A stretch of 64,000 bases of DNA from Podarcis muralis (taxonomy: Eukaryota): positions 16,988,001 to 17,052,000 of the forward strand of contig NC_135667.1 of assembly GCF_964188315.1 (NCBI RefSeq). Direction: 5' to 3'. Within the stretch, counting starts at the first letter, position 1; the number at the start of each line of letters is the position of its first letter. A program made the position numbers and the translations under genes. This document shows positions 36,954-61,833 of this stretch, piece by piece. The notes under the pieces are model-generated. The model saw nothing but the letters and a program-made list of their open reading frames with translations. It was not told the DNA's origin and did no database searches.

Positions 36954-37351
36954 TACAGATGGGTAGCCGTGTTGGTCTGCCATAGTCAAAACAAAAAAAA
37001 TTCCTTCCAGTAGCACCTTAAAGACCAACTAAGTTAGTTCTTGGTATGAGCTTTCGTGTGCATGCACACTTCTTCAGATACACTGAAACAGAAGTTGCCA
37101 GATCCTTCTATATAGTGAGAAGGTGGGGAGGGGTATTACTCAGAGGAGGGTGGGGATGGATATCTGCCAATCACCCATCCCCACCCTCCTCTGAGTAATA
37201 CCCCTCCCCACCTTCTCACTATATAGAAGGATCTGGCAACTTCTGTTTCAGTGTATCTGAAGAAGTGTGCATGCACACGAAAGCTCATACCAAGAACTAA
37301 CTTAGTTGGTCTTTAAGGTGCTACTGGAAGGAATTTTTTTTGTTTTGACTA
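36954..37351. mobile_element. Penelope-like retroelement end arranged as a perfect inverted repeat
   Basis: GTAGCCGTGTTGGTCTG...GCACCTTAAAGACCAAC...AGCTTTCGTG...CACTTCTTCAGATAC resembles lizard Penelope termini (recalled). Arms 36983-37159 and 37175-37351 are exact reverse complements. ACTAAAATCCTGC is duplicated at 36941 and 37348. Smaller related palindromes at ~42290-42460 and ~52835-52950. Confidence 0.8.
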
Positions 37352-37399
37352 AAATCCTGCATTAATTTCCCCCGTCATTTTCTATCAGCAGCAGCCTCT

Positions 37400-38122
37400 T
37401 TCCGTCCCGGAGGAGACCGAATATGACGCCCGAAGTAAACCCGGTGGCAGCCTCCGCGTACGAGTCTTTTGCTTGTAAGTCTATAATCTTCCTATTGCGC
37501 GCATGCGCTGCGCCGCGGAAAACGGCGAAGAAAACCGAGCGAATCATCCGCGCATGCGCCGCTCGTGGAGTAACGACAGTCATGAACTTTTGAATATGAT
37601 GCGCTTTCCGTTTTACCCCCCCACCCGGCCCCGCCCCGCCTCCTTCCCTCCAGCTTTCGGGGCCTGATTGGTCGCTACAACGGGCCAATGCCGCGCTACA
37701 GAACACTCCCGTTACTGGGTAGATTTCCTTCAATAGGTAGGACGAGTCTGTCTGGCGACGTTTCTGTGAGGACCGAGAGGAGAGTGGAGGAAAAGGCTGA
37801 CGGTTTGGCGGGTTGCTGTTAGGAATGAACTGGGATGACGTTTACTTGAATGCAGGAAATAAGGGAAATTCCCGACCACGAGATTAGATGAAGGGCTTTG
37901 ACTATTGTATCTCGAGCTGTTCTCTCCCCCCCCCCGCACCAAAATGGAAGAGGCCCACTCGCTTCCCCTCTCGCTGACGTCACTTCTGGCGCAGGCGCCG
38001 CATTTCCGTTGACGCCACTTTTTTCATTCTTGTCCGAACTCTCGCCTCACTTCCGCGGAGGAGCGCAGCGGCATTAAGAGAGTTTGGTCGCAGTGGGAGC
38101 CCGTAGCGGGCCGCGCGCGCAG
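37400..38122 (+). promoter_or_regulatory. CpG-island promoter and probable first non-coding exon of the Cys-rich TM gene
   Basis: NRF1 GCGCATGCGC at 37499 and 37550, GC box ~37627-37640, CCAAT boxes ~37666 and ~37684, full CRE TGACGTCA 37975-37982, ETS CACTTCCG 38048, donor CAG|GTGCGG at 38122/38123. Confidence 0.7.
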
Positions 38123-38973
38123 GTGCGGTTTCCAGGGCGACCGAGGGACGCCTTGGTATATTTACATACTGCATGGCTCCCAAGTTGCCCAGAGCAGCGT
38201 CTCCCCCTCTCCCGTTTTATCCTCACAACAGCCCCGTGAGGTAGGTTAGGCTGAGAGACAACGGCTTCAGAGCCCAGTTTATTCTCGGCCATTCGCTCCA
38301 CAATGCAGGAAGCCCGGAAAGCGTATGAACGTGATACGAATAAAGCTGCACAGTGAATGATAAACTGTATTCATAAGGGAGTGGACATTAATGAGAAGGG
38401 ACTGGAGGTTCATCAACATTGGAAGGAGGAGGAGGAAGGCCTGTTTCGTTTCCATTTGGTTATGGAAAAAGGCAATTTTGAGGAAGGGAGGGATGCTATG
38501 AACAGGGAGAGGGGAAGTAGGCTTGTCTGAGGGGGTTGTGGGGTCAACTGTCAAAACAGAAGACAAATATTCGAGCTTCATTTCCAAAATAAAAATTTAT
38601 CCCAGTGACACTGAAACTTTAATCAATACCATTCTACATACAGGTATGTGTGTGTGTGTTATAACAGCAACATAAGAGCTTTGGAGCCTGTTTGATCAGT
38701 CTCAATATGGTTTAGACCTCTTTGAAATCAGTAGTGTTCAGAGTTAATATATATGAATGAAAGCTTCATGAAGAAAGTGAGTTTTAACTCTTTTGTTCGG
38801 TAAATTCTGACCCTCTCTTTTGATCTAGCAGACTATAGATGTTGTGCTCAAGGAACAAGTGGAAGCATGGACTGTGGACTGTAATAGCTTCAAGTTATTT
38901 GTCTCTTCCTCGGGGCTCTGAGCTATCCATGGAGCCTCCAGAGGTTGATGCCTAGTCCTTCCCCAACTGAGGA

Positions 38974-41254
38974 ATGGCAGTAAGTAGAGCATTCTTACTC
39001 TCTATTCACACTGCCCCTCACTTAACTTCTCAAAGCGCCCCATCTCTCCTCTCCCAGTTTGACATGTGACTGAACTGAATTTAATAAATCTACTTATGAA
39101 TCAGTGAAGACTTGATTTGAAAGCCATGTGTTAAAATTCAAACATTTTGAGTTTGGAATATTGATTATTGTGGGATACTCTCCATATAAGTTTTAGTATG
39201 TGATCCTCTGTGCCTCACAGATATTTGAAGGTTAGAAACTCACTAAACAGTACTATCTCTGCAGTTGCTGCTGCCACCACTAAATTAAGATGAATCACCT
39301 AACTTCCAAACATGTACTAACCTATGTCAGAGAAGCTATACACTTGGTGTATATGCTTCTGGTCAGAGGTTAAACATTCCCTCTGCCAATTTTCTGATAT
39401 TAAGAACCTTCCAATTTCCCAGAAGGTATTTCATGTTAAATCAAAAGCTGTATTTCAGTGTTCAGCCATGTAATTCCTTTAATTGCTCTTCTTCCTCCTC
39501 ACCACTCCATACTGTAAATGTCCCTTCTCCTTTGGCTTTCCTCCCCTTACAGACTCCATCGCTGAACCCTCCACCAGACCTCCCTTTTGCCACAACCTTA
39601 TTCCTGCCTCTCCCTGCCATCGTTTTCTTGGTCGTTGGATCCTACTTAATACTCCTGGCCGTGGTCCTTGTCCTCCGACAGTGCCTGATGGTAACTTGGG
39701 GAAGGGATGGCAATAGTTGAAAGGGCAAACACATTTGGGGATTTTTATAGGTGTAGTAATGAGAATAGATCTATCTTTTCCATAGTGCATTACAGCATAC
39801 CATATGACAGTGCATTATGGGAGCAGTAGTCCTTTGGAGAGCAAGTAGAAAGGGGAACAAATTCACATTGTTAATATTGTGTGGTTGGTGTTCTGACAAT
39901 TTTGAATTAAAAGGTAAAGGTAAAGGTACCCCTGCCCGTACGGGCCAGTCTTGACAGACTCTAGGGTTGTGCGCCCATCTCACTCTATAGGCCGGGGGCC
40001 AGCGCTGTCCGAAGACACTTCCGGGTCACGTGGCCAGCGTGACATCGCTGGTCTGTCGAGCCAGAGCCGCACACGGAAACGCCGTTTACCTTCCCGCTAG
40101 TAAGCGGTCCCTATTTATCTACTTGCACCCAAGGGTGCTTTCGAACTGCTAGGTTGGCAGGCGCTGGGACCGAGCAACGGGAGCGCACCCCGCCACGGGG
40201 ATTCGAACCGCCGACCTTTCGATCAGCAAGTCCTAGGCACTGAGGCTTTAACCCACAGAGCCACCCGTGTCCCAATTTTGAATTACTAACAATTTTGAAT
40301 TACTTGCAATCAATTCCGTAACAAATCATAGGAGCTCTAGCCTATGAGAGATAAAAGGAATTGCTTCTTAACTCAAGTTGTTTGGTGAACCAACCTGGTT
40401 TTCCTTCTCTTACCTCTTTGCAGGCCCGGGGTCTTTGTGCCAACTGCTGTTCCTGTGAAAAGCGGCCTTGGCCAAACATGTGCGAATGCTGTTTGACCTG
40501 TGCAGAATCATGTGACTGTGCCCTTCCTTCCCCAACCCGCTGTATGGATCGCTACTGCACCTGTACTAATGTGAGTTTTCCCTCCACATAATTGATCGGC
40601 TTTTTGGAAATATCTGAGACTAGTTCCCCCTGGGGTCATTTGAATACAGTGGTACCTCTGGTTACAAACTTAATTCATTCGTTTTTTACTAAAGCCCATA
40701 CTTAAAATCATATGCTAATCAAAACAGTATATATAATTTGAAAGGAGGAGAGGGACAGGCAAGAGGGATCCGTGTGGGAGGAAGAAAGATGAACAGGGTA
40801 GACAGACACTTACACTTTCTTTAGAGCTTGTCAGAGCTTCTCCAGGGAGGCTGTGGCCTGCATGTTGAGAAACATTGAACTTACAGGTGTTCAGAGTGGG
40901 AAAACGTCAAGGGAACTTACCATGATAATCAGACCTATCCTTTGCTGGTATCTTATCTTCAGACAATGCCTATTTATTAATTTAAAATATTTTCCCCTTC
41001 CTTGCAACAGTCTTGTGGTAATCATTATTCAGTATTTCCCTGAGTCTCAAGTTTAGTGAAGGATGCTGTAACATCTTGATGCAGGTATTTCCATAGGTTA
41101 ACAGTGTACAATTTCTGTCTCTTACCAGCAGGGCTGGGAACCAGGGGCTTGTTCCTTTCCTCGCTTGTGTCCACTCTGCGATTGTGCCTGCACATACCAG
41201 CCCCCAGACTGCCAGAACATCAATTGCATTTGCTTTGAGATCAAACTGCGATAA
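38974..41254 (+). CDS. Uncharacterised ~138-aa single-pass membrane protein with cysteine-rich tail (likely orthologue of the human uncharacterised ORF upstream of ALDOA)
   Basis: Exons 38974-38979 (ATG GCA|GTAAGT), 39553-39690 (TPSLNPPPDLPFATTLFLPLPAIVFLVVGSYLILLAVVLVLRQCLM), 40424-40570 (ARGLCANCCSCEKRPWPNMCECCLTCAESCDCALPSPTRCMDRYCTCTN), 41129-41254 (QGWEPGACSFPRLCPLCDCACTYQPPDCQNINCICFEIKLR*). All phase 0 and GT-AG. AATAAA at 41505. Confidence 0.85.
39910..40273 (-). mobile_element. Sauria SINE, distinct subfamily, in an intron of the Cys-rich gene
   Basis: Same head and tail architecture. 12-bp TSD AATTTTGAATTA at 39898-39909 and 40274-40285. Confidence 0.9.
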
Positions 41255-41504
41255 AGAACTCAAGATAACAAAAAGATTATGTCTGTGATTTGGGAGTGTG
41301 GGATGATTTGGAAGTCTTCATACCAGTGGTGGATCCTACAAGCAAAATGGGGAGTTAGTTGCTCAGCCTGACATAATTAACTTGTCCTGATGCAAGAAGT
41401 TTTGAAACTGAGCTTTTTCTTTTTCATGTTGATTTTTCAAGTGCTTTTGTACTTTGTATTGCATGTTTGATATTAATGTTTTTATATTAATTGCTGCATT
41501 TTAT

Positions 41505-41510
41505 AATAAA
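41505..41510 (+). terminator. Polyadenylation signal of the Cys-rich TM gene
   Basis: AATAAA ~250 nt after the stop codon, followed by GT-rich sequence. Confidence 0.6.
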
Positions 41511-44029
41511 GCAGGTTGAATATCACTTGTGTCTCTCTTTAATGAGAATGCAAATGGAGTCCATTTAATAGACATTTGCTGCATGGAGAAGTTTGATGGC
41601 TAAGTTTATGAAAAAGTTTAGGTATTTTTTCTTGTTCACCGAAGTATGCAGTTGAATGTTGGAAGCCGGAAGAAATGCAATGAGGAGATCATTGTCAGAA
41701 GATCTGTGTGAAATAAAAAAAATAATATAGTATCTTCCAGTAGGGGGAAAAAAGCTTTCCTCCCCGATTACATTTAAAGCAGTATCATGCCACTTTAGAT
41801 AGTCATGACATTCCCCAAATAATCCTGGGAAATGCAGTTTGTTAAGGGTGCTGAGAGTTGCTAGGAGCCTCCCTATTCCCTTCACAGAGCTACAGAGTTT
41901 CTTGGGAAGAGGGATTGACTGTTAAATCACTTTGTGTGGAGGGGAATAGATGTCTCCTAATAACTCACAGCTCCCTTAACATACTGCAGTTCCCAGGATT
42001 TTTTTGGGGGGAAGCCATGCTTAAAGTGGTAGCATAGTGCTTTAAATGGATAGTGCAGATAGGCCTCAGTGATAGCCTCAAATGACCTCCAAGCCACATA
42101 AAAGCATCTACAATGTGACAAACACCCTTGCCCCCTCTTAAGTGCACAAACACATGATGAGGGACAGGCGTTTAATTACCATTACAATTATCTGCATTCT
42201 GCCTTTCAGGATACAGATCAAGCTAGCTCACAAGAAGCACTGAACTTTAATCACATTTAAAAAAGCAATAACATTTCAATAAGCATAATAAATAAGTTGA
42301 AAGATGAAAAAAAAATCTTTTTAATAATTCCAGTGGCACCTTGTAAGATCAACTAAATATAAGCTTTCAAGGTATGAGCTTTCGTGTGTAATATTTAGTT
42401 GATCTTAAACGTGCCACTGGAATTATTTAAAAAGATTTTTTCATCTTTCATCTTGTTATTTATTATGGCTATGACAGATCAGCATGGCTATCCACCTCAA
42501 TGTAATTTCAATGAACAATATCAATATTTTAAAAAGTAATCAGCACAGCTGGAGAAGGCTCTGAGGTGGCCTTCATCACATGCCTGCTTCTTATCTCCAG
42601 GAACCATTCCCACAGGACCAGTAATGGTAGATGTCCTGGAGAGGAAAAAGCACCCAAATAGCTCTAGGCAGCTAGGTGTAAAAACACAAACATTGGGATA
42701 TGGCATAGATTCTGGATGTGTCCTAAATTCAGGAGGTGCTGGGAAGAGATAAGAACAGAAATTGAAGAAATAATGGGCTATATTTTACCCAAGGGTCCTC
42801 TAATTTTCCCATTTGGGTATGCTCAAGAAGCTCTTTTAACAGAGGACAGGGAATGAAGACAACATCTCTTGATGGCTGCCAGAATTATTATTTGTCAAAA
42901 CTGGGGGAAACAGAGCATCTATGAGGGGAAAAATAATTAAAATATGGGACACAATATGCATGGCTAAGCTCACACATGTGGTTAGAACCAGAGAGGGTAG
43001 ACAGCAAGATAACAGATTTATGGAGAAATGGAGTCTTTGTCATGTACTGGAGCCATAAGGTCAGAATAACGCAGTTATTTAGAACCTTGATCTGTTATAC
43101 TTATTTTCATATGGAAATTGGTTCTGCTATGTTCAGTTCTAGATACCCCTTATAGTTTTATTGTCAGCATTTGTTATATTTTGTTGTGTTCCACAAACAC
43201 ACACTAACAGCTCTAGGCAAACATGGAGGGGAATGAGCAAAGGAAAGTGTAAAAGGATCACCAAGAGATTGGGGGATAGGGTTGTACCGGAAAGTCTGTG
43301 CCTAGCCCTGAAGGTGTTCCTGGGAAGCTGAGGTGCCTTGGCTGTCTGAAGAAACTAGCGTGTGCTACCTTTTAGTTCTGCAGACCTAGGGCCATCAAGG
43401 ATAACATATGGTTTCTCATAGAATCATAGAGTTGGAGGGGCCACAACAGTCATCTAGTCCAACCCCCTACAAAGCAGGAATCTTTTGCTCAGTGTGGCGC
43501 TTGAACCCACAATCCTGAGATTAAGAGACTCATGCTCTACTGTCTGACCTATCCCAGCTAACAGGGAAACTGTCCCTCAAAAATAAAAGCCAACTTCCCA
43601 TTGGGGGTGCGTGGATCTTCTTAGTTCACAAAGTCTCTTTACAAGGGTTACAATGGGATCCTATGCATGCCTTACTCAAAATCCCATCACTTACTCCCAA
43701 GTAAACATGCATAAGATTGTTGCTCCAGTAGTTTGATATATTTGCATATGCAGATGAGGGATGTAAAATTTGAATGGAACGGAAGAGCACTAGTAATTGA
43801 TACCCTGGATATCCCAGCAAAATACTTTTAATCCACTATATTCAACAATTGCTAAACAGCCGGTCCTCTCGTCCTTCTTTACTGAAGCATTATCACAACA
43901 GGGGGCAAAAAAGTGGGAAGCCCACAGTTAAACCTCCCATCACAAAAGCAGTAGCTTGTCTCTGGATGGAGAGGCGACTCCATCTTGGAATTGGGGCTCG
44001 TTCCCACAGCCAAGATGACTCTTTCCCCT

Positions 44030-45761: not shown

Positions 45762-47377
<1,616 letters not shown>

Positions 47378-57146: not shown

Positions 57147-61833
<4,687 letters not shown>

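What the first reader, a model, noticed from the sequence alone, without database searches (positions are those of the whole stretch)
38974..41254. Conserved uncharacterised single-TM microprotein with 22 cysteines
Seen: four phase-0 exons give ~138 aa. The protein has a short Pro-rich N-terminus, one hydrophobic helix followed by R (suggesting N-out/C-in topology), then a tail with 22 Cys in CC/CxC/CxxC clusters ending CPLCDCAC…DCQNINCICFEIKLR. It has a CpG promoter with a full CRE, its own AATAAA, and a NAGNAG acceptor (41126-41131) giving ±Gln. From memory it closely matches the human uncharacterised ORF annotated upstream of ALDOA (LOC112694756: LPIPAIVF…CPLCDCACTCQLPDCQSLNCLCFEIKLR), implying amniote-wide constraint with no known function. 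Inference: a polypalmitoylated or metal-binding (metallothionein-like) membrane adaptor.
Basis: partly seen in the sequence, partly recalled or inferred. Interest (0 to 1): 0.85.

Follow-up and report, generated by a model that had tools for sequence, protein, structure and literature searches.

The report
Conserved cysteine-rich single-pass membrane protein gene
This is a real, transcribed lizard gene for a 137/138-residue membrane protein with one membrane helix and a 22-cysteine tail; it is the counterpart of the unstudied human gene LOC112694756 in the 16p11.2 interval, and its family runs across bilaterian animals with no known function.

Summary
Four phase-0 coding pieces (38974-38979, 39553-39690, 40424-40570, 41129/41132-41254) give 138 or 137 aa with 22 Cys. 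All three coding introns are joined in RNA from four runs. Corrections:
- The gene has five exons. Alternative non-coding first exons lie in a CpG island about 1 kb upstream, beside a CRE that is conserved in snake and gecko.
- Only the distal acceptor (no extra Gln) was seen in the RNA.
- The family is far older than amniotes. It occurs in mammals, turtles, squamates, amphibians, coelacanth, ray, teleosts and lamprey, and also in a hemichordate, annelids, molluscs, chelicerates, a priapulid and Seison. Two intron positions are shared with hemichordate and horseshoe crab.

The protein is 135/138 identical to Zootoca "LOC112694756 homolog". Synteny is TLCD3B, this gene, a CRK-like gene, then ALDOA. 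dN/dS is 0.10-0.22 among squamates. No Pfam family, solved structure or paper describes it, and several orthologues are misnamed "keratin-associated protein".

Flank charges and N-terminal glycosylation sequons point to N-out/C-in, so the Cys-rich tail is probably cytosolic. AlphaFold models only the membrane helix with confidence. My best guess, which is inferred, is a small lipidated (S-acylated) and possibly metal-binding partner subunit. The gene is annotated but functionally unknown.

The parts
37251..38250 (.). CpG island holding the promoter(s)
   Evidence: CpG observed/expected 0.87-1.17 at GC 0.52-0.57 in 500-nt windows. The transcript 5' ends lie inside it.
37975..37982 (+). Full CRE (TGACGTCA), 7 nt upstream of the start of the longest 5' contig (37989)
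   Evidence: 2 sites in 64 kb, 0.25 expected. The 12-nt block TGACGTCACTTC is identical at the aligned promoter position in snake and gecko.
37662..37736 (+). Alternative non-coding first exon 1a
   Evidence: The joint 37734(+2)>38830(+2) is GT..AG, seen in an X8 contig and in 4 raw reads of X23.
37989..38240 (+). Alternative non-coding first exon 1b (donors at 38122 or 38240)
   Evidence: Joints 38238(+2)>38827/38830(+2) and 38118(+4)>38828 in X1, X2 and X23. Donor sequences checked.
38829..38979 (+). Exon 2: 5'UTR with several upstream ATGs, then start codon ATG GCA (38974-38979). The acceptor is TAGCAG, used at 38829 or 38832.
   Evidence: The start context is gaggaATGG. 'MA' followed by an intron is shared with snake and gecko.
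39553..39690 (+). Exon 3: Ser/Thr/Pro-rich N-terminal segment, the membrane helix and the RQCLM juxtamembrane motif
   Evidence: AlphaFold helix 22-49 has pLDDT above 90.
39910..40275 (-). tRNA-derived SINE inside intron 3 (not part of the mRNA)
   Evidence: Word depth is 30,000-65,000 and hundreds of loose ends fall at 39909-39916. A tRNA-like head is readable on the minus strand.
40424..40570 (+). Exon 4: first conserved Cys block (consensus C.CC..CAE.CDC..PS...CLD..C)
41126..41131 (+). NAGNAG (CAGCAG) acceptor; only the distal AG was seen in use
   Evidence: One search gives the sequence. One search shows the joint 40570>41132 in all four runs and no 41129 joint above threshold. The motif is absent in snake and gecko.
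41132..41525 (+). Exon 5: second conserved Cys block ending ...NCICFEIKLR, stop TAA at 41252-41254, 3'UTR, and AATAAA at 41505-41510

Best explanation
**Identity (well supported, about 0.97).** This is a five-exon, transcribed, protein-coding gene. It is the squamate orthologue of human LOC112694756 and zebrafish si:ch211-198p11.6. It belongs to an undescribed protein family found across bilaterian animals.

**Architecture.**
- A 17-20-residue N-terminus rich in Ser/Thr/Pro and free of basic residues.
- One strongly conserved membrane helix: LPxPAI...G.Y, with an invariant Tyr.
- A basic juxtamembrane stretch, R-Q-C-L-x-A-R-G-x-C.
- A tail of about 90 residues carrying some 20 conserved Cys positions in two blocks.

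**Mechanism (inferred, about 0.4).** The protein inserts N-out/C-in, as a type III membrane protein. The Cys-rich tail therefore sits in the reducing cytosol against the inner leaflet. There the juxtamembrane cysteines, and many of the tail cysteines, are S-acylated. This pins acidic, partly helical Cys stripes to the membrane. The conserved membrane helix plus the lipidated tail would then act as a small auxiliary or adaptor subunit of another membrane protein. That is how the Cys-rich MDFI/MDFIC/MDFIC2 proteins act on PIEZO channels and how FXYD-type single-pass subunits act on pumps. Some of the thiols may also chelate Zn or Cu.

**Shown versus inferred.** Shown: the gene model, transcription, purifying selection, orthology, and the lack of membership in any curated family. 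Inferred: the topology (from charge and sequon statistics), the lipidation, and the existence of a partner.
For: **Gene model and RNA.**

**Orthology.**
- 135/138 identical to Zootoca XP_034990619.1 (E=4.6e-88).
- Full-length hits to proteins named 'LOC112694756 homolog' or 'si:ch211-198p11.6' in turtles, a caecilian, coelacanth, a ray, lamprey and a rodent.
- Synteny TLCD3B / gene / CRK-like / ALDOA in the window and in gecko, matching the human order in PMC11354020.

**Selection.** dN/dS is 0.10-0.22 against snake and gecko. Coding exon sizes are 6/138/147 in all three species and 120-123 nt for the last.

**Deep homology.** There are hits in a hemichordate, annelids, molluscs, chelicerates, a priapulid and Seison. 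The phase-0 intron right after the RQCLL motif, and the next intron, sit at the same place in Ptychodera and Limulus.

**Topology.**
- In 36 sequences the N-flank has almost no K/R and is net acidic, while the 15 residues after the helix are net basic in most of them.
- N-x-S/T sequons are three times denser in the N-terminal segment than in the tail. They recur in spiders, horseshoe crabs, bivalves and an annelid.
- The tail Cys count varies from 14 to 29 and is often odd among close orthologues. This argues against a fixed disulfide knot.

**Partner docking.** Y33 is invariant and P21/A24/I25/A29 are at 75-92% inside or at the edge of the helix.

**Tail fold.** AlphaFold gives pLDDT 37-58 for the tail with 36- and 64-sequence alignments, with short helices at 67-77 and 85-92. 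This fits a segment that needs lipid, metal or a partner.

**Precedent.** Palmitoylated Cys in the C-terminal helix of the Cys-rich I-mfa proteins is required for PIEZO modulation (PMC12626003).
Against: - No experiment or prediction tool here tests acylation.
- The precise Cys spacing and the conserved neighbours (PS...CLD, Q.PDC, NC.CFE) could equally mark a metal-dependent fold.
- There is no sequence similarity to MDFI/I-mfa, Sprouty, CYSTM or FXYD families. A profile search of PDB sequences found nothing below E=0.6.
- The topology rests on statistics, not on an assay.
- N-terminal sequons this close to the N-terminus and to the membrane may not be used.
- The alignments are shallow (36-64 sequences), so the low AlphaFold confidence is weak evidence.
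Confidence: 0.4

Rival explanations
1. Membrane-tethered metal-thiolate domain. The cytosolic tail folds around several Zn(II) or Cu(I) ions, as Cys4 sites or metallothionein-like clusters. It would act as a metal buffer, sensor or hand-over point at a membrane, with lipidation limited to the one or two juxtamembrane Cys.
For: - About 20 Cys columns are at least 60% conserved, with fixed spacing in two blocks: CxCCxxCxxxCxC and CxCxC...C....CxC.
- The tail is probably cytosolic and therefore reduced.
- AlphaFold cannot model metals. By general knowledge, metallothioneins also come out with low confidence, as this tail does.
- An expandable Cys-rich middle region in invertebrates resembles metallothionein-like plasticity.
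Against: - No member matches a metallothionein or zinc-finger Pfam family at E<=1.
- No His is conserved.
- The tail is net acidic, with conserved aromatic and aliphatic residues (F133, L89, I131). Classical metallothioneins are Lys-rich and lack aromatics (established knowledge).
- The Cys count varies from 14 to 29.
Confidence: 0.3
2. Reverse topology (N-in/C-out). The Cys-rich region would then be an extracellular or luminal disulfide-knotted domain acting as a ligand or receptor module.
For: - High Cys density with conserved spacing is typical of extracellular knots.
- The lizard protein has an even number of Cys, 22.
- One fragment is auto-named 'Agouti signaling protein' in UniRef.
- The weak chance-level PDB hits are to extracellular Cys-rich modules.
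Against: - There is no signal peptide, and the N-flank lacks basic residues while the C-flank is basic in most sequences. By the positive-inside rule this gives N-out.
- Cys counts are frequently odd and differ between close orthologues: 19-23 in vertebrates, 14-29 overall.
- Glycosylation sequons are enriched on the N-terminal side, not in the tail.
- AlphaFold finds no compact fold.
Confidence: 0.1
3. Annotation artefact or non-coding transcript. On this view the Cys-rich frame is a compositional accident, as the 'keratin-associated protein' labels would suggest.
For: The 5'UTR carries 4-5 upstream ATGs, including an overlapping uORF. The human locus ID appears in expression tables with ALDOA-like behaviour, which suggests read-through confusion.
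Against: - dN/dS is 0.10-0.22.
- Coding exon sizes and phases are conserved (6/138/147 nt identical; last exon 120-123 nt).
- Spliced RNA is present in four runs.
- Homologues with shared intron positions exist in hemichordate and horseshoe crab.
- E-values reach 1e-88.
Confidence: 0.02

Closest known systems
LOC112694756 (human 16p11.2) / si:ch211-198p11.6 (zebrafish) orthologue group, annotated but uncharacterised
   Same: Full-length sequence similarity, the same architecture, the same neighbours (TLCD3B upstream, ALDOA downstream) and the same coding exon plan in squamates.
   Different: Nothing essential; this is the lizard orthologue. A CRK-like gene lies between it and ALDOA in squamates. 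A lacertid-specific NAGNAG can add one Gln, but that form was not seen in the RNA here.
MDFI / MDFIC / MDFIC2 (I-mfa domain proteins, PIEZO auxiliary subunits)
   Same: An acidic, very Cys-rich cytosolic region. In the I-mfa proteins, Cys palmitoylation in a C-terminal helix is required for channel modulation (PMC12626003). One scallop orthologue of the present family is auto-named 'myoD family inhibitor domain-containing protein-like'.
   Different: There is no detectable sequence relationship: PF15316 is not hit in 44 members scanned, and a PDB sequence search is empty. The present family has a genuine N-terminal membrane helix. Its C-terminal block is not predicted helical.
Metallothioneins
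   Same: A high density of CC, CxC and CxxC motifs, no conserved His, and a low-confidence apo structure.
   Different: No Pfam metallothionein match. The tail is 23% Cys rather than about 30%. It is membrane-anchored, has conserved aromatic and aliphatic residues, and is acidic rather than Lys-rich.
Small type III single-pass regulatory subunits and adaptors (FXYD, SMIM5, TMIE, LAT-type adaptors)
   Same: A short N-out segment, one conserved helix, and basic plus Cys juxtamembrane residues. The language-model neighbours are of this class but weak, at 0.63-0.75.
   Different: No sequence membership. None of these carries a 20-Cys tail. LAT-type adaptors rely on multiple Tyr motifs, which are absent here.
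Keratin-associated proteins (the name given to several orthologues by automatic annotation)
   Same: Only the Cys-rich composition.
   Different: No keratin-associated Pfam match. It has a membrane helix and occurs in invertebrates that have no hair keratins. The name is a compositional mislabel.

Membership tests
LOC112694756 / si:ch211-198p11.6 orthologue group | Full-length sequence similarity to named members | tested here: met
   E=4.6e-88 to the Zootoca 'LOC112694756 homolog' and 1.5e-32 to the Latimeria 'si:ch211-198p11.6' protein. Hits also include lamprey (5.2e-12) and rodent (1.3e-25) 'LOC112694756 homolog' proteins.
LOC112694756 / si:ch211-198p11.6 orthologue group | Conserved position between TLCD3B and ALDOA | tested here: met
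   ALDOA exons lie at 57351-57617 and 60103-60357. TLCD3B was noted upstream. In gecko a TRAM_LAG1_CLN8 gene lies upstream and an SH2/SH3 gene downstream. The human order TLCD3B, LOC112694756, ALDOA is given in PMC11354020.
LOC112694756 / si:ch211-198p11.6 orthologue group | Shared exon-intron plan | tested here: met
   Coding exons are 6/138/147/120-123 nt in lizard, snake and gecko. The introns after RQCLL and after the first Cys block are shared with Ptychodera and Limulus.
Metallothionein (Pfam PF00131 and related) | Sequence match to a metallothionein profile | tested here: not met
   No metallothionein family at E<=1 in 36 members or at E<=10 in P0001.
Metallothionein (Pfam PF00131 and related) | Stoichiometric Zn/Cu/Cd binding by thiolate clusters | not testable with these tools
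   Needs ICP-MS or native mass spectrometry on the purified tail.
I-mfa domain (MDFI/MDFIC, PF15316) | Sequence match to the I-mfa domain | tested here: not met
   No PF15316 hit in 44 members scanned. Profile and single-sequence searches of PDB chains found nothing below E=0.6. The Atlas feature score is only 0.47.
I-mfa domain (MDFI/MDFIC, PF15316) | Multiple S-palmitoylated Cys needed for function | not testable with these tools
   Needs acyl-PEG exchange or acyl-RAC.
Keratin-associated proteins | Match to keratin-associated protein profiles; soluble hair-matrix protein without a membrane helix | tested here: not met
   No such Pfam hit. A confident membrane helix spans residues 22-49.
CYSTM (PF12734) | C-terminal Cys-rich membrane module | tested here: not met
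   No Pfam hit. Here the helix is N-terminal and contains no Cys. The Atlas score is 0.53.
Type III (N-out/C-in) single-pass membrane proteins (a topological class, not a homology family) | No signal peptide, short uncharged or acidic N-flank, basic C-flank | tested here: met
   Charge counts in 36 sequences and sequon enrichment on the N side. The topology itself was not assayed.

The most novel reading that the evidence does not exclude
The family is an ancient bilaterian auxiliary subunit. It has so far been missed because insects, nematodes and possibly birds lack it. Its conserved Tyr-bearing membrane helix and multiply S-acylated (or metal-loaded) Cys-rich tail would regulate a specific channel, transporter or receptor. 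On this reading its dosage contributes to the human 16p11.2 deletion/duplication phenotypes.
Probability: 0.15. Interest if true: 0.85.

Novelty: new member of a known kind. Interest (0 to 1): 0.6.

Why it matters
The lizard gene itself is an orthologue of a catalogued locus, so it is not a discovery of a new gene. The catalogued family, however, has no Pfam entry, no solved or confidently predicted structure and no paper. This work shows that the family predates the protostome-deuterostome split, keeps its intron positions, and is under purifying selection.

In humans the gene sits inside the recurrent 16p11.2 BP4-BP5 copy-number interval linked to autism, schizophrenia and obesity. There it is only ever listed by its LOC number. 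In expression tables it seems to be confounded with ALDOA.

A 20-Cys cytosolic tail on a conserved single helix is a tractable biochemical question: is it acylated, metal-loaded, or both? Zebrafish, Xenopus and mouse orthologues are available for knockout.

Tried and rejected
1. **Pfam scans.** P0001, all 36 members of A2 and 8 further members gave only chance-level hits in the membrane helix.
2. **PDB sequence searches.** Profile and single-sequence queries found nothing below E=0.6.
3. **AlphaFold2.** Runs with 36- and 64-sequence alignments left the tail at pLDDT 37-58. I therefore ran no fold searches, because a low-confidence model gives meaningless matches.
4. **ESM Atlas.**
   - The whole protein finds its own unnamed clusters (0.92-0.97). 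It then finds only weak type III or viroporin-like neighbours (0.63-0.75).
   - The tail alone scores at most 0.53.
5. **Internal duplication of the two Cys blocks.** hhalign gave probability 0.2%, so this was rejected.
6. **Profile word-index search to deepen the family.** It added only one new protein.
7. **Literature.**
   - LOC112694756 and AC093512.2 appear only in gene lists or expression tables.
   - No paper contains the C-terminal peptide.
   - No paper mentions the zebrafish clone name.
8. **The +Gln NAGNAG isoform.** It was not seen in RNA.
9. **Coelacanth locus look-up.** It failed, as the protein is not on record.
10. **Earlier scan notes.** None covered paralogues in this genome.
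Full report
**1. What is in the sequence**

The pieces are 38974-38979, 39553-39690, 40424-40570 and 41129-41254. Using the AG three bases downstream (41132) gives 137 aa. Every boundary is GT..AG and phase 0 (my first attempt was off by one base at exon 3).

The protein begins MATPSLNPPPDLPF. A hydrophobic stretch follows, LPLPAIVFLVVGSYLILLAVVLVL, then RQCLMARGLC. After that comes a tail with CC, CxC and CxxC groups that ends CPLCDCACTYQPPDCQNINCICFEIKLR.

**2. Transcript evidence**

I laid three sets of assembled RNA contigs (three studies) and one raw stranded RNA-seq run on 37400-41700.

- The three coding introns are joined exactly as predicted in all four runs. The joints are 38979>39553, 39689/90>40423/4 and 40570>41132. 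Raw-read support is 22, 6 and 13 reads from many start positions.
- First mates lie on the minus strand only, as expected for a + strand RNA in a standard stranded library.
- The last acceptor used is 41132 in every run. No 41129 joint passed the reporting threshold, so the 137-aa form is the main product here.
- The +Gln form exists as Zootoca isoform X1. The CAGCAG motif is absent in snake and gecko.
- Upstream, the ATG-bearing exon starts at 38829 or 38832 (a TAGCAG acceptor). It is fed by alternative non-coding first exons at 37662-37736 or 37989-38122/38240.
- These first exons lie in a CpG island. The CRE TGACGTCA at 37975-37982 sits 7 nt before the 5' end of the longest contig.
- The block TGACGTCACTTC is identical at the aligned promoter position in Candoia and Eublepharis. 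The element is therefore conserved across squamates.
- Contigs end at 41525, 15 nt after the end of the only AATAAA in the 3' flank, at 41505-41510.

**3. Identity**

A word-index search seeded with the exon-3 ORF returned squamate proteins of 137-151 aa. These are named "uncharaterized LOC112694756 homolog" or "uncharacterized protein".

- The Zootoca protein (P0001) differs from the window's product at three conservative positions in the membrane helix, which is 135/138 identity.
- With P0001 as query, full-length relatives appear in turtles, a caecilian, axolotl, frogs, coelacanth and a ray. The last two are named si:ch211-198p11.6.
- An exhaustive phmmer search gave 52 cluster representatives at E<=1e-3.
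- Cluster look-ups place these in the following groups:
  - Vertebrates: mammals (afrotherians, xenarthran, rodent, bat), teleosts and lamprey.
  - Other deuterostomes: the hemichordate Ptychodera.
  - Lophotrochozoans: annelids (Capitella, Paralvinella) and molluscs (chiton, scallops, pearl oyster).
  - Ecdysozoans and others: spiders, horseshoe crabs, Priapulus and Seison.
- No bird, crocodilian, insect or nematode was among the named hits. That is an observation, not proof of loss.
- Several orthologues carry compositional misnomers: keratin-associated protein 10-11, 5-2, 5-9 and 4-1-like; Agouti signaling protein; and MyoD family inhibitor domain-containing protein-like.

**4. Orthology beyond similarity**

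- The window holds aldolase A exons at 57351-57617 and 60103-60357, and an SH2/SH3 (CRK-like) gene at about 45.8-47.4 kb. Earlier notes of this scan place TLCD3B and C16orf92 upstream.
- The gecko locus has the same order: a TRAM_LAG1_CLN8 gene on the opposite strand, this gene, then an SH2-SH3 gene. The snake locus also has the SH2-SH3 gene downstream.
- The human order TLCD3B, LOC112694756, ALDOA is given in the gene lists of 16p11.2 BP4-BP5 deletions (PMC11354020).
- Coding exons are 6, 138 and 147 nt in lizard, snake and gecko, and 120-123 nt for the last.
- In Ptychodera and Limulus an intron follows the first few codons. Another phase-0 intron falls exactly after the RQCLL/RQRLL motif, and another after the first Cys block. 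The invertebrates have one extra intron inside the second block.

**5. Selection**

Pairwise NG86 dN/dS between the window, Candoia and Eublepharis coding sequences is 0.10, 0.13 and 0.22. The tail is at least as constrained as the helix, at 0.08-0.18.

**6. Family features**

In a 36-sequence alignment from mammals to Seison, analysed:

- 20 columns are at least 60% Cys. C130 and C132 are invariant. C53, C78, C93, C111 and C125 are at least 92%.
- Non-Cys positions are conserved too. Y33 is invariant inside the helix, and P21, G51, P83, D90, P94, P112, P123, N129, F133 and E134 are also conserved.
- The middle of the tail varies in length. Total tail Cys runs from 14 to 29, with odd and even counts among close relatives.
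- The two Cys blocks are not detectably duplicates of each other (hhalign).

**7. Topology (inferred)**

- The N-terminal segment is rich in Ser, Pro, Ala and Thr. It has essentially no Lys or Arg and is net acidic. The 15 residues after the helix are net basic in most sequences. By the positive-inside rule this predicts N-out/C-in.
- N-x-S/T sequons occur at 1.15 per 100 residues in the N-terminal segments against 0.38 in the tails. They recur in spiders, horseshoe crabs, two bivalve lineages and an annelid. One unnamed member has four sequons before the helix.
- This fits a luminal or extracellular N-terminus and a cytosolic tail.

**8. Structure and known families**

- No Pfam family is matched by any of 44 members beyond chance hits in the helix.
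- No PDB chain matches by sequence.
- AlphaFold2 with 36 or 64 aligned sequences models helix 22-49 at pLDDT above 90. It leaves the tail at 37-58, with tentative short helices at 67-77 and 85-92. I did not run fold searches on such a model.
- The ESM Atlas finds only the protein's own unnamed clusters. Below them are weak neighbours that are type III or viroporin-like small membrane proteins. For the tail alone, the neighbours are Cys-rich or palmitoylated proteins at non-significant scores.

**9. How it probably works**

A cytosolic tail with more than 20 reduced thiols next to the membrane has two established fates, S-acylation and metal coordination.

I favour S-acylation as the dominant state (about 0.4), for these reasons:
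- The first conserved Cys lie 3 and 10 residues after the helix, a classical acylation position.
- The tail is acidic, with conserved aliphatic and aromatic residues. It is not Lys-rich and aromatic-free like metallothioneins.
- Its Cys number drifts between orthologues.
- C71, C74 and C78 form an i, i+3, i+7 stripe in the tentative helix.

There is now a documented precedent. In the Cys-rich I-mfa proteins MDFI, MDFIC and MDFIC2, palmitoylated Cys in a C-terminal helix are required to modulate PIEZO channels (PMC12626003). The unusually conserved membrane helix, with an invariant Tyr, suggests docking to a partner in the bilayer, as in other single-pass auxiliary subunits.

The metal-cluster model (about 0.3) remains fully open. 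An extracellular disulfide knot (about 0.1) is disfavoured by the charge, sequon and Cys-parity data. None of these was assayed.

**10. Literature**

- LOC112694756 occurs in nine papers, only in CNV gene lists or expression tables.
- AC093512.2 appears in 16p11.2 gene lists. It was also a dosage-sensitive transcript in iPSC-derived dopaminergic neurons (PMC8131375).
- In two tables the LOC ID behaves like ALDOA: ribosomal-protein-level expression, and Reactome "neutrophil degranulation" membership. This suggests read-through or ID confusion in human data.
- No paper contains the C-terminal peptide or the zebrafish clone name.

**11. Verdict**

The gene is a new (lizard) member of an annotated yet entirely uncharacterised family. 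This analysis extends that family from "amniote" to bilaterian.

Noticed in passing
window 38829-38979: The 5'UTR exon carries four upstream ATGs. One is an out-of-frame uORF starting at 38948 that overlaps the main start codon. The uATG in the context ATGGAGCCTCC (38930) is also present about 40 nt upstream of the start codon in snake and gecko. This suggests translational control.
   Followed up: partly
window 38826-38831: A second NAGNAG (TAGCAG) lies at the acceptor of the ATG-bearing exon. Both AGs are used in different runs. The effect is on the UTR only.
   Followed up: yes
window 39910-40275 (minus strand) and 40640-40680: A tRNA-derived squamate SINE sits in intron 3, with RNA word depth of 30,000-65,000. 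A second short repeat fragment has depth of about 1,000. Both reflect genome-wide repeat expression, not this gene.
   Followed up: partly
window 39619 and 39661: The RNA runs carry two conservative coding differences from the reference in the membrane helix: I25V (seen in X23) and V39L (seen in X2 and X23). There is also a synonymous change at 39561 (seen in X1 and X23). V39L matches the Zootoca residue.
   Followed up: partly
window 45798-47377; L002 12222-13917; L001 14582-14932: A 251-aa SH2-SH3-SH3 (CRK-like) gene lies between this gene and ALDOA in the lizard, gecko and snake. It is not in the human gene lists for this interval.
   Followed up: partly
window 57351-57617 and 60103-60357: Aldolase A exons are readable as ORFs on the + strand, which fixes the synteny.
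   Followed up: partly
window 13042-13049 and CpG island 13001-14250: The only other full CRE in the window lies at the edge of another, stronger CpG island.
   Followed up: no
P0003 (Phrynosoma), P0002 (Sceloporus), P0006 (Lerista): Annotated variants in other squamates. One is an in-frame skip of the first Cys-block exon, giving 88 aa. Another is a 10-14-aa extension after RQCLL from an alternative donor. In the window, reading through that donor hits a stop after 9 codons.
   Followed up: partly
Human LOC112694756 in PMC8848773 and PMC11296473: The LOC ID shows ribosomal-protein-level expression and is placed in 'neutrophil degranulation'. This looks like ALDOA signal assigned through read-through models. 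Human expression data for this gene should be treated with care.
   Followed up: no
P0025 (1057 aa, ENA): A long protein has 18 short matches to the C-terminal Cys block of the query in phmmer. The family HMM did not retrieve it, so it is probably a compositional repeat protein.
   Followed up: no
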